From: Octopus bimaculoides
Taxonomy: Eukaryota
Assembly (NCBI RefSeq): GCF_001194135.2
Contig: NC_068984.1
Location: 9,451,865-9,486,628 of the forward strand
Direction of reading: 5' to 3'
DNA length: 34,764 nt
In this document: positions 30,256 through 30,869 of the stretch, in pieces
How positions within the stretch are numbered: the first letter of the stretch is position 1
How the letters are laid out: each line of letters starts with the position of its first letter
The notes under the pieces: generated by a model
What the model saw: only the letters and a program-made list of their open reading frames with translations
Databases searched by the model: none
Told to the model about the DNA's origin: nothing
Translations under genes and position numbers: made by a program

Positions 30256-30319
30256 GAATGGCTTTCATATTAATATATAAACAGTTTTTTTTTCTTTCAA
30301 TAGTATCATTTATTATGCG
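30256..30319 (+). CDS. Putative first coding exon (ATG at 30258) encoding a signal peptide MAFILIYKQFFFLSIVSFIM(R) of an LRR-family protein
   Basis: Acceptor gtatctttag|GA ATG; 20 open codons with hydrophobic core FFFLSIVSFIM; donor CG|gtaaat at 30319/30320 leaves phase 2, matching the next exon. Confidence 0.65.
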
Positions 30320-30693
30320 GTAAATAAAGATATTAACATATACAGGTAATTCTATCTCTACTTCTCATTTGATTTGATATCTACGTAATGTTTCTATCAT
30401 ATATACTTGTTTTCGGTGCCGCTGGCCAATTAGCGATAAATATATATATATATANNNNNNNNNNNNNNNNNNNNNNNNNNNNNNNNNNNNNNNNNNNNNN
30501 NNNNNNNNNNNNNNNNNNNNNNNNNNNNNNNNNNNNNNNNNNNNNNNNNNNNNNNNNNNNNNNNNNNNNNNNNNNNNNNNNNNNNNNNNNNNNNNNNNNN
30601 NNNNNNNNNNNNNNNNNNNNNNNNNNNNNNNNNNNNNNNNNNNNNNNNNNNNNNNNNNNNNNNNNNNNNNNNNNNNNNNNNNNNNNNNNNNNN

Positions 30694-30755
30694 CTACTAT
30701 ATAGCCTCGGGCCAACCAAAGCCTTGTGAGTAGATTTGGCAGACGAAAGCTTATA
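30694..30755 (+). mobile_element. SINE family A fragment inside the LRR-gene intron
   Basis: ctactatatagcctcgggccaaccaaagccttgtgagtagatttggcagacg. Confidence 0.75.
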
Positions 30756-30823
30756 AGCAACATGGGGCAAGAATGTCTCTAAAAAATTCATTTTCTCTAC
30801 TCTCATCTTGACTTTGCTTTTAG

Positions 30824-30869
30824 AGCTACTTGTCCACCTAGTTGCTATTGTTCTTATACCAAAATAACG
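30824..30869 (+). CDS. Coding exon for an LRR N-terminal cysteine cap (LRRNT): (R)ATCPPSCYCSYTKIT
   Basis: Long polypyrimidine acceptor ttttctctactctcatcttgactttgcttttag| and donor ACG|gtaatt; 46 nt, phase 2 to phase 0; CPxxCxC motif; the next exon (expected to start with Cys) was not found in the window. Confidence 0.72.

What the first reader, a model, noticed from the sequence alone, without database searches (positions are those of the whole stretch)
30256..30869. Hidden 5' end of an LRR-family secreted or receptor gene, invisible to the ORF track
Seen: two small exons with GT-AG sites join in phase 2 to give MAFILIYKQFFFLSIVSFIMRA-TCPPSCYCSYTKIT. Known: a signal peptide directly followed by CPxxCxCxxxxxxC is the LRRNT cap of Slit, Trk, LGR and related LRR proteins, and CxCSxTxIx resembles the N-terminal cluster of vertebrate TrkB/TrkC. 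Inference: this is an LRR surface protein, possibly a Trk-like or LGR-like receptor. LRRNT is generic, so the family cannot be assigned. The acceptor just before the ATG implies upstream UTR exons.
Basis: partly seen in the sequence, partly recalled or inferred. Interest (0 to 1): 0.7.

Follow-up and report, generated by a model that had tools for sequence, protein, structure and literature searches.

The report
Unsupported two-exon LRR-like gene start

Summary
The letters are as described. ATG 30258-30319 (donor GCG|GTAAAT) joined to 30824-30869 (acceptor CTTTTAG|A, donor ACG|GTAATT) gives MAFILIYKQFFFLSIVSFIMRATCPPSCYCSYTKIT. The 239-N gap lies inside the proposed intron, so its length does not affect the frame. 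The join does cross two contigs whose adjacency cannot be checked.

Nothing independent supports a gene:
- Pfam LRRNT and PDB give no hit for the real peptide.
- Two very large protein searches find no protein with this N-terminus. Controls did not show that this organism is in those databases, so this result is weak.
- The 3.9 kb downstream holds no fourth-Cys or LRR exon, only SINE copies, a decayed LINE and microsatellites.
- Exon 1 is 21% GC with a T9 run, more AT-rich than its flanks.

Some features are better than typical chance. CP..C.C is expected only 0.05-0.17 times per window. The flanking splice signals are good. The residues between the cysteines fit the LRRNT profile better than 39 of 40 background fillings.

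Real LRRNT gene starts are rare, and this model needs a 46-nt exon splitting the cap. I estimate chance pattern about 0.7, real LRR gene start about 0.17, other real exon about 0.08. RNA-seq or the downstream scaffold would settle it.

The parts
30258..30319 (+). Putative exon 1: ATG plus 20 codons and 2 bases (MAFILIYKQFFFLSIVSFIM, then CG), followed by GTAAAT. The in-frame stop-free segment is only 30216-30320. GC is 21% and there is a T9 run at 30285.
   Evidence: Hydrophobic ATG..GT mini-exons of this kind are frequent in the window.
30320..30823 (+). Putative intron, 504 nt as scaffolded. It contains the 239-N assembly gap 30455-30693, a (TA)n run at its left edge and a dispersed-repeat fragment at 30694-30748.
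30824..30869 (+). Putative exon 2, 46 nt: (R)ATCPPSCYCSYTKIT. It has a strong pyrimidine tract plus AG before it and GTAATT after it. Read-through hits a stop after 4 more codons (VIYA*, TAA at 30882).
   Evidence: It holds the only CP..C.C in six frames.
30694..30748 (+). Fragment of a dispersed repeat (SINE-like family with at least 8 copies or fragments in the window). It starts mid-element at the gap edge.
31269..31724 (+). Two tandem copies of a second SINE-like repeat, downstream of exon 2. Not coding.
31821..33329 (+). Decayed LINE reverse-transcriptase remnant with frameshifts and stops. It fills most of the downstream sequence where a next exon was predicted.
   Evidence: RVT_1, 33.9 bits for 32396-32842

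Best explanation
This is a chance open-reading pattern in AT-rich, repeat-rich non-coding DNA of a draft animal genome, not a gene start. Translating AT-rich DNA gives Phe/Ile/Leu/Tyr/Lys-rich strings that look like signal peptides. GTAA and pyrimidine-tract-AG strings are common in such DNA. One CP..C.C string happens to lie between an AG and a GT. Joining the two pieces across a scaffold gap gives a peptide that resembles the first 13 residues of an LRRNT cap. On this reading nothing is transcribed or spliced here.
For: Shown:
- The real peptide has no Pfam hit and no PDB hit at E<=10.
- Nothing was found among 5.8 billion proteins or 1.84 billion representatives.
- The fourth cysteine that defines LRRNT is absent. 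Read-through stops 4 codons after exon 2.
- No LRR consensus run occurs in any frame of the window.
- None of the 10 downstream AG|Cys sites continues like an LRRNT; they lie in SINE, LINE or TG-repeat sequence.
- Exon 1 is 21% GC against 33% in its upstream flank and carries a T9 run.
- About 20 distinct hydrophobic ATG..GT mini-exons exist in the window.
- CP..C.C alone is expected 0.05-0.17 times per window.
- The rest of the window is SINE-like repeats, LINE remnants, microsatellites and gaps, with no recognisable cellular gene.

Inferred, from my own knowledge of gene structures and not tested here: real LRRNT caps are almost always encoded within one exon. A 46-nt exon that ends between Cys3 and Cys4, together with a separate 62-nt signal exon, should be rare, on the order of 0.1-2% of LRRNT genes. 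With roughly 100 such genes in a genome of a few Gb, the prior for a real one in a 35-kb window is about 0.001. That gives about 1e-6 to 2e-5 for the real case, against about 1e-5 to 4e-4 for chance.
Against: - The flanks are better than typical chance. Only 0.2% of random stop-free anchors in the window (0.9% within 2 kb) have a pyrimidine-rich acceptor, a GTRA donor and a phase-matched hydrophobic ATG exon.
- The motif starts two codons after the acceptor, right where a mature LRRNT protein would begin.
- The residues between the cysteines (S after CxC, T, then I two residues before the expected Cys4) fit the LRRNT profile. With identical hypothetical padding, only 1 of 40 background-filled scaffolds reached the observed 13.7 bits, and two shuffles of SYTKIT gave no hit.
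- The exon ends exactly after X6, in phase 0, where a Cys codon could follow.
- The database negatives are weak because coverage of this organism was not demonstrated.
Confidence: 0.7

Rival explanations
1. The first reader is right. These are the first two coding exons of an unannotated LRR-family surface or secreted protein. Exon 1 encodes a signal peptide. Exon 2 encodes the first three cysteines of the LRRNT cap (CX3CXCX6). The fourth Cys and the LRRs lie in exons beyond the window, past a long intron that contains SINE and LINE insertions.
For: - The pattern A-x-CPxxCxCSxTxIx right after a hydrophobic N-terminus, with a phase-0 end after X6.
- Good acceptor and donor strings; the strict flank test is passed by only 0.2-0.9% of random anchors.
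- The LRRNT profile fit of the inter-cysteine residues beats 39 of 40 background fillings.
- With a hypothetical continuation, all PDB matches are N-terminal LRRNT caps: VLRs, Slit2, TrkC, GPIb-beta/IX and AMIGO-1, at E 0.016-10.
- Purine at -3 and G at +4 around the ATG.
Against: - No significant similarity for the real peptide anywhere.
- The fourth Cys and every LRR are missing from the 3.9 kb available downstream.
- An LRRNT split by an intron, with a 46-nt exon, is unusual (my own knowledge).
- Met at -3 of the proposed A22|T23 cleavage site and a hydrophobic n-region are atypical for a signal peptide (reading of the sequence; SignalP not available).
- Exon 1 composition is indistinguishable from, or more AT-rich than, non-coding flanks.
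- The join crosses an unverified scaffold gap.
Confidence: 0.17
2. One or both pieces are real exons of something else. One option is a two-exon gene for a small secreted cysteine-containing peptide: if 30870 is not spliced, the ORF is 40 aa, MAFILIYKQFFFLSIVSFIMRATCPPSCYCSYTKITVIYA, with its stop at 30882. Another option is that exon 2 is an internal exon of a larger gene whose other exons lie outside the window.
For: - Read-through of exon 2 closes the frame after 4 codons.
- AATAAA lies about 205 nt downstream, at 31089.
- Exon 2 has good splice-like flanks on its own.
Against: - AATAAA occurs once per 783 nt in this window by chance.
- The mature peptide would have three cysteines, an odd number.
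- Nothing matched in either protein search.
- There is no transcription evidence of any kind.
Confidence: 0.08

Closest known systems
LRRNT cap (Pfam PF01462), as in lamprey variable lymphocyte receptors, Slit2 and TrkC
   Same: It has Cys-Pro-x-x-Cys-x-Cys-Ser spacing, a Thr, and an aliphatic residue two positions before where the fourth Cys would sit. It lies directly after a hydrophobic N-terminus. With a hypothetical continuation the peptide aligns to ACPSQCSCSGTTVNC of the VLRs.
   Different: Only 13 of about 28 domain residues are present. The fourth Cys is absent. The real peptide has no Pfam hit, and even the padded version scores 13.7 bits against a 25.8-bit gathering score. No LRR follows within the window. 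The proposed exon break inside the cap is unusual.
Trk receptor N-terminal cysteine cluster (TrkB/TrkC)
   Same: Same CX3CXCX6 spacing. TrkC (PDB 4pbv) appears among the padded-query matches.
   Different: It ranks below the VLRs and Slit2, at E 0.79 and 13.1 bits, so there is no Trk-specific signal. No Ig-like or kinase exon is in the window.
Spurious ORFs and pseudo-exons in AT-rich intergenic or intronic DNA
   Same: Phe/Ile/Leu/Tyr/Lys-rich translation, 21% GC, a T9 run, short stop-free spans (35 and 33 codons), and surroundings made of SINE-like repeats, LINE remnants and microsatellites.
   Different: The combination of motif, splice-like flanks and profile-like inter-cysteine residues is rarer than a typical pseudo-exon.

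Membership tests
LRRNT domain (PF01462) | Four conserved cysteines (CX3CXC...C) forming the cap | tested here: not met
   Three cysteines are present. In the DNA as read, a stop follows 4 codons after exon 2. No downstream AG|Cys site continues like an LRRNT. A fourth Cys would have to come from an unseen exon.
LRRNT domain (PF01462) | Score at or above the Pfam gathering threshold (25.8 bits) | tested here: not met
   No hit for the 36-aa peptide or for the 33-aa stop-free segment. The version padded with a hypothetical C....L..IP scores 13.7 bits.
LRR-family extracellular protein | Tandem LxxLxLxxNxL repeats following the cap | tested here: not met
   No run of the consensus in any of the six frames. 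Downstream stop-free segments are LINE, SINE or microsatellite translations. Sequence beyond 34764 cannot be tested.
LRR-family extracellular protein | Cleavable N-terminal signal peptide | tested here: inconclusive
   A hydrophobic core is present (maximum Kyte-Doolittle 2.64 over 9 residues). Comparable ATG mini-exons are common in the window. Met at -3 of the proposed site is atypical. SignalP is not available.
Expressed, spliced gene | Transcript evidence for the 30319/30824 junction | not testable with these tools
   No RNA-seq or eukaryotic genome resource is available. No predicted protein shares the N-terminus, but database coverage of this organism is unproven.
Trk receptor family | LRR, Ig-like and tyrosine-kinase domains in one gene | tested here: not met
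   None of these is encoded in the window. The rest of any such gene would lie outside the window.

The most novel reading that the evidence does not exclude
An unannotated LRR receptor or secreted protein of this animal whose LRRNT cap is split by an intron between the third and fourth cysteine. It would have a 62-nt signal exon and a 46-nt micro-exon that gene finders miss. If so, 5' ends of LRR genes in this draft genome may be truncated systematically.
Probability: 0.17. Interest if true: 0.3.

Novelty: not a real feature. Interest (0 to 1): 0.12.

Why it matters
If real, it would be one more LRR-family gene start missed by annotation in a fragmented invertebrate assembly. That would help curation of this genome and say a little about micro-exons in LRRNT caps, but it is not a new kind of biology. 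If it is chance, as I think more likely, the lesson is practical. In AT-rich, repeat-rich DNA, a hydrophobic ATG mini-ORF plus a short cysteine motif between AG and GT is not enough to call a gene. A join across a scaffold gap adds a further unverifiable step.

Tried and rejected
Padded to 40 aa with X it found no candidate.
2. HMMER search of 1.84 billion representatives with the peptide: 0 hits.
3. PDB phmmer with the real peptide: 0 hits at E<=10.
4. I tried to reach the source contig and its downstream flank through exact look-ups. Two window ORFs were not on record.
5. Control searches with LINE ORFs found only ENA ORF calls at 70% and 55% identity or less, plus one named bryozoan protein. 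The one contig fetched (L001) shares only LINE coding sequence with the window, at about 72% DNA identity. It is not a close relative, and it cannot give the orthologous locus.
6. An exact-match scan of metagenome contigs for exon 2 found nothing.
7. Literature searches for the peptide string and for cephalopod or mollusc LRRNT and Trk found nothing usable.
8. Rfam and tRNA scans of the window found nothing.
9. Self-comparison shows neither exon is part of a repeat within the window. The idea that exon 2 is a piece of a SINE was dropped.
11. I recall the dispersed repeats as resembling abundant Octopus SINEs. This rests on memory only, was not tested, and is not used as evidence.

Full report
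**What is in the sequence**

- An ATG at 30258 opens 20 codons plus two bases (MAFILIYKQFFFLSIVSFIM, then CG), ending at 30319 before GTAAAT.
- At 30824, after TCTCTACTCTCATCTTGACTTTGCTTTTAG, 46 bases run to 30869 before GTAATT.
- Joined, they give MAFILIYKQFFFLSIVSFIMRATCPPSCYCSYTKIT and end in phase 0.
- The stop-free spans around the two pieces are short: 30216-30320 and 30783-30881.
- Reading on from exon 2 gives VIYA and then a stop. Any LRRNT reading therefore needs splicing exactly at 30869/30870.

**The gap**

The window has ten N runs totalling 5,025 bases. The one at 30455-30693 lies wholly inside the proposed intron, so the frame does not depend on its estimated length.

It does separate the two exons onto different contigs.
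- Its left edge is a (TA)n run.
- Its right edge begins in the middle of a dispersed repeat. 30694-30748 matches positions 131-188 of copies at 2070-2400, 25475-25762, 12975-13242(-), 26590-26859 and others.
- This is the usual picture of an assembly break at repeats. It is compatible with local continuity but does not prove adjacency or orientation.

**Surroundings**

I found no recognisable cellular gene in the window.
- There are two families of SINE-like repeats in many copies, including two tandem copies at 31269-31724.
- There are decayed LINE remnants at about 15.7-17.2 kb and 31.8-33.4 kb. Pfam gives zf-RVT at 19.2 bits and RVT_1 at 33.9 bits, and there are hundreds of RT homologues.
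- There are long microsatellites and low-complexity tracts.
- Rfam and tRNA scans are empty.
- The 3.9 kb downstream of exon 2 is SINE, LINE and microsatellite.
- No LxxLxLxxNxL run exists in any frame of the window.
- None of the ten downstream AG|TGY sites opens anything like the rest of an LRRNT.

**Is the pattern more than chance?**

- CP..C.C occurs once in six frames. First- to third-order Markov models of the window expect 0.05-0.17.
- Hydrophobic ATG..GT mini-exons are common, with about 20 distinct ones on the two strands. This follows from AT-rich DNA translating into Phe, Ile, Leu, Tyr and Lys.
- Exon 1 is 21% GC, below its 33% upstream flank, and carries a T9 run.
- I treated every stop-free 7-codon position in the real window as a mock motif and asked for three things: a pyrimidine-rich acceptor, a GTRA donor, and a phase-matched hydrophobic ATG exon upstream. 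This succeeded at 0.2% of positions within 600 nt and 0.9% within 2 kb. With lenient criteria it succeeded at 10-25%.
- The strict thresholds were chosen after seeing the case, so the fair figure lies between the two.

**Does the peptide look like LRRNT beyond the three cysteines?**

- The real peptide, and the stop-free segment around exon 2, get no Pfam hit even at E<=10.
- They get no PDB hit either.
- When I appended a hypothetical C....L..IP, the LRRNT score was 13.7 bits, below the 25.8-bit gathering score.
- As a control I filled the same scaffold and padding with residues drawn from the window's own six-frame translations. Three of 40 gave an LRRNT hit (16.8, 12.1 and 10.5 bits), and only one reached 13.7.
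- Two shuffles of SYTKIT gave no hit.
- The inter-cysteine residues therefore sit in roughly the top few per cent of chance fillings.
- With the same padding, all PDB matches are N-terminal LRRNT caps: lamprey VLRs best at E 0.016, then Slit2, with TrkC at E 0.79, and also GPIb-beta/IX and AMIGO-1.
- The resemblance is therefore generic and not Trk-specific, and it is partly built in by my padding.

**External evidence**

- No protein among 5.8 billion shares three 5-residue words with the peptide.
- No representative among 1.84 billion reaches E<=0.001.
- The controls weaken these negatives. LINE ORFs from the window hit only ORF calls at 70% and 55% identity or less, mostly unnamed ENA contigs. 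The one contig I fetched shares only LINE coding sequence with the window.
- I therefore could not show that this organism's proteome or transcriptome is in the databases.
- Attempts to recover the source contig and its downstream flank failed.
- A DNA scan of metagenome contigs and four literature searches were also empty.

**Weighing**

These figures are rough and rest partly on my own knowledge.

For chance:
- motif, about 0.1;
- flanks, 0.005 (strict) to 0.15 (lenient);
- inter-cysteine fit, about 0.025;
- together, about 1e-5 to 4e-4 per window.

For a real gene:
- roughly 100 LRRNT genes in a genome of a few Gb gives about 0.001 per 35-kb window;
- the unusual structure (a separate 62-nt signal exon plus a 46-nt exon ending between Cys3 and Cys4, where most known LRRNT caps lie within one exon) gives a factor of about 0.001-0.02;
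- together, about 1e-6 to 2e-5 per window.

From this I put:
- a real LRR gene start at about 0.17;
- some other real exon at about 0.08, for example a 40-aa two-exon secreted peptide ending at the TAA at 30882 with AATAAA at 31089, although that hexamer occurs once per 783 nt here;
- a chance pattern at about 0.7.

**Verdict**

Its statistical weight is modest. The interpretation has no independent support and cannot be decided with these tools. If real, it is an ordinary unannotated member of a very large known family. If not, it is a pseudo-exon pair. Interest is low either way. RNA-seq across 30319/30824, or inspection of the scaffold beyond the window, would settle it quickly.

Noticed in passing
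window 15683-17181 (+) and 31821-33329 (+): Two decayed LINE remnants with frameshifts and stops. Pfam gives zf-RVT (19.2 bits) on 16376-16879 and RVT_1 (33.9 bits) on 32396-32842. The closest database ORFs are only 70% and 55% identical.
   Followed up: partly
window 2070-2400, 7460-7560, 10646-10718, 12975-13242(-), 25475-25762, 26590-26859, 29162-29258(-), 30694-30748: A dispersed SINE-like repeat family of about 270-330 nt at 79-88% identity. Several fragments abut assembly gaps, so the gaps seem to fall at repeats. From memory it resembles abundant Octopus SINEs; this was not tested.
   Followed up: partly
window 1339-1742, 6212-6343(-), 8667-9056(-), 24548-24867, 31269-31724: A second SINE-like family at 75-83% identity, often as two tandem copies. 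No tRNA or Rfam match was found for either family.
   Followed up: partly
whole window: Ten N gaps totalling 5,025 of 34,764 bases (14.5%), mostly flanked by (TA)n or (TG)n microsatellites. Every multi-contig feature in this window depends on unverified scaffolding.
   Followed up: yes
window 18066-19024 and 19355-21170: Very long low-complexity tracts: GAA/GAG repeats that read as poly-Glu or poly-Ser, His-rich and Cys/Val-rich translations, and CA/TG-type repeats over about 3 kb with strong GC and AT skew. They create many long spurious ORFs.
   Followed up: no
window 30824-30884 and 31089: If exon 2 is not spliced at 30870, the joined ORF closes at TAA 30882, giving a 40-aa product with three cysteines. 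AATAAA lies about 205 nt downstream. Both are easily chance in this composition.
   Followed up: partly
window 30023-30257: A TATAAA at 30023 lies about 235 nt upstream of the ATG. Four other ATGs (30060, 30133, 30199, 30223) lie between them. An unspliced 5' UTR starting there would carry several upstream ATGs, which would not favour initiation at 30258.
   Followed up: no
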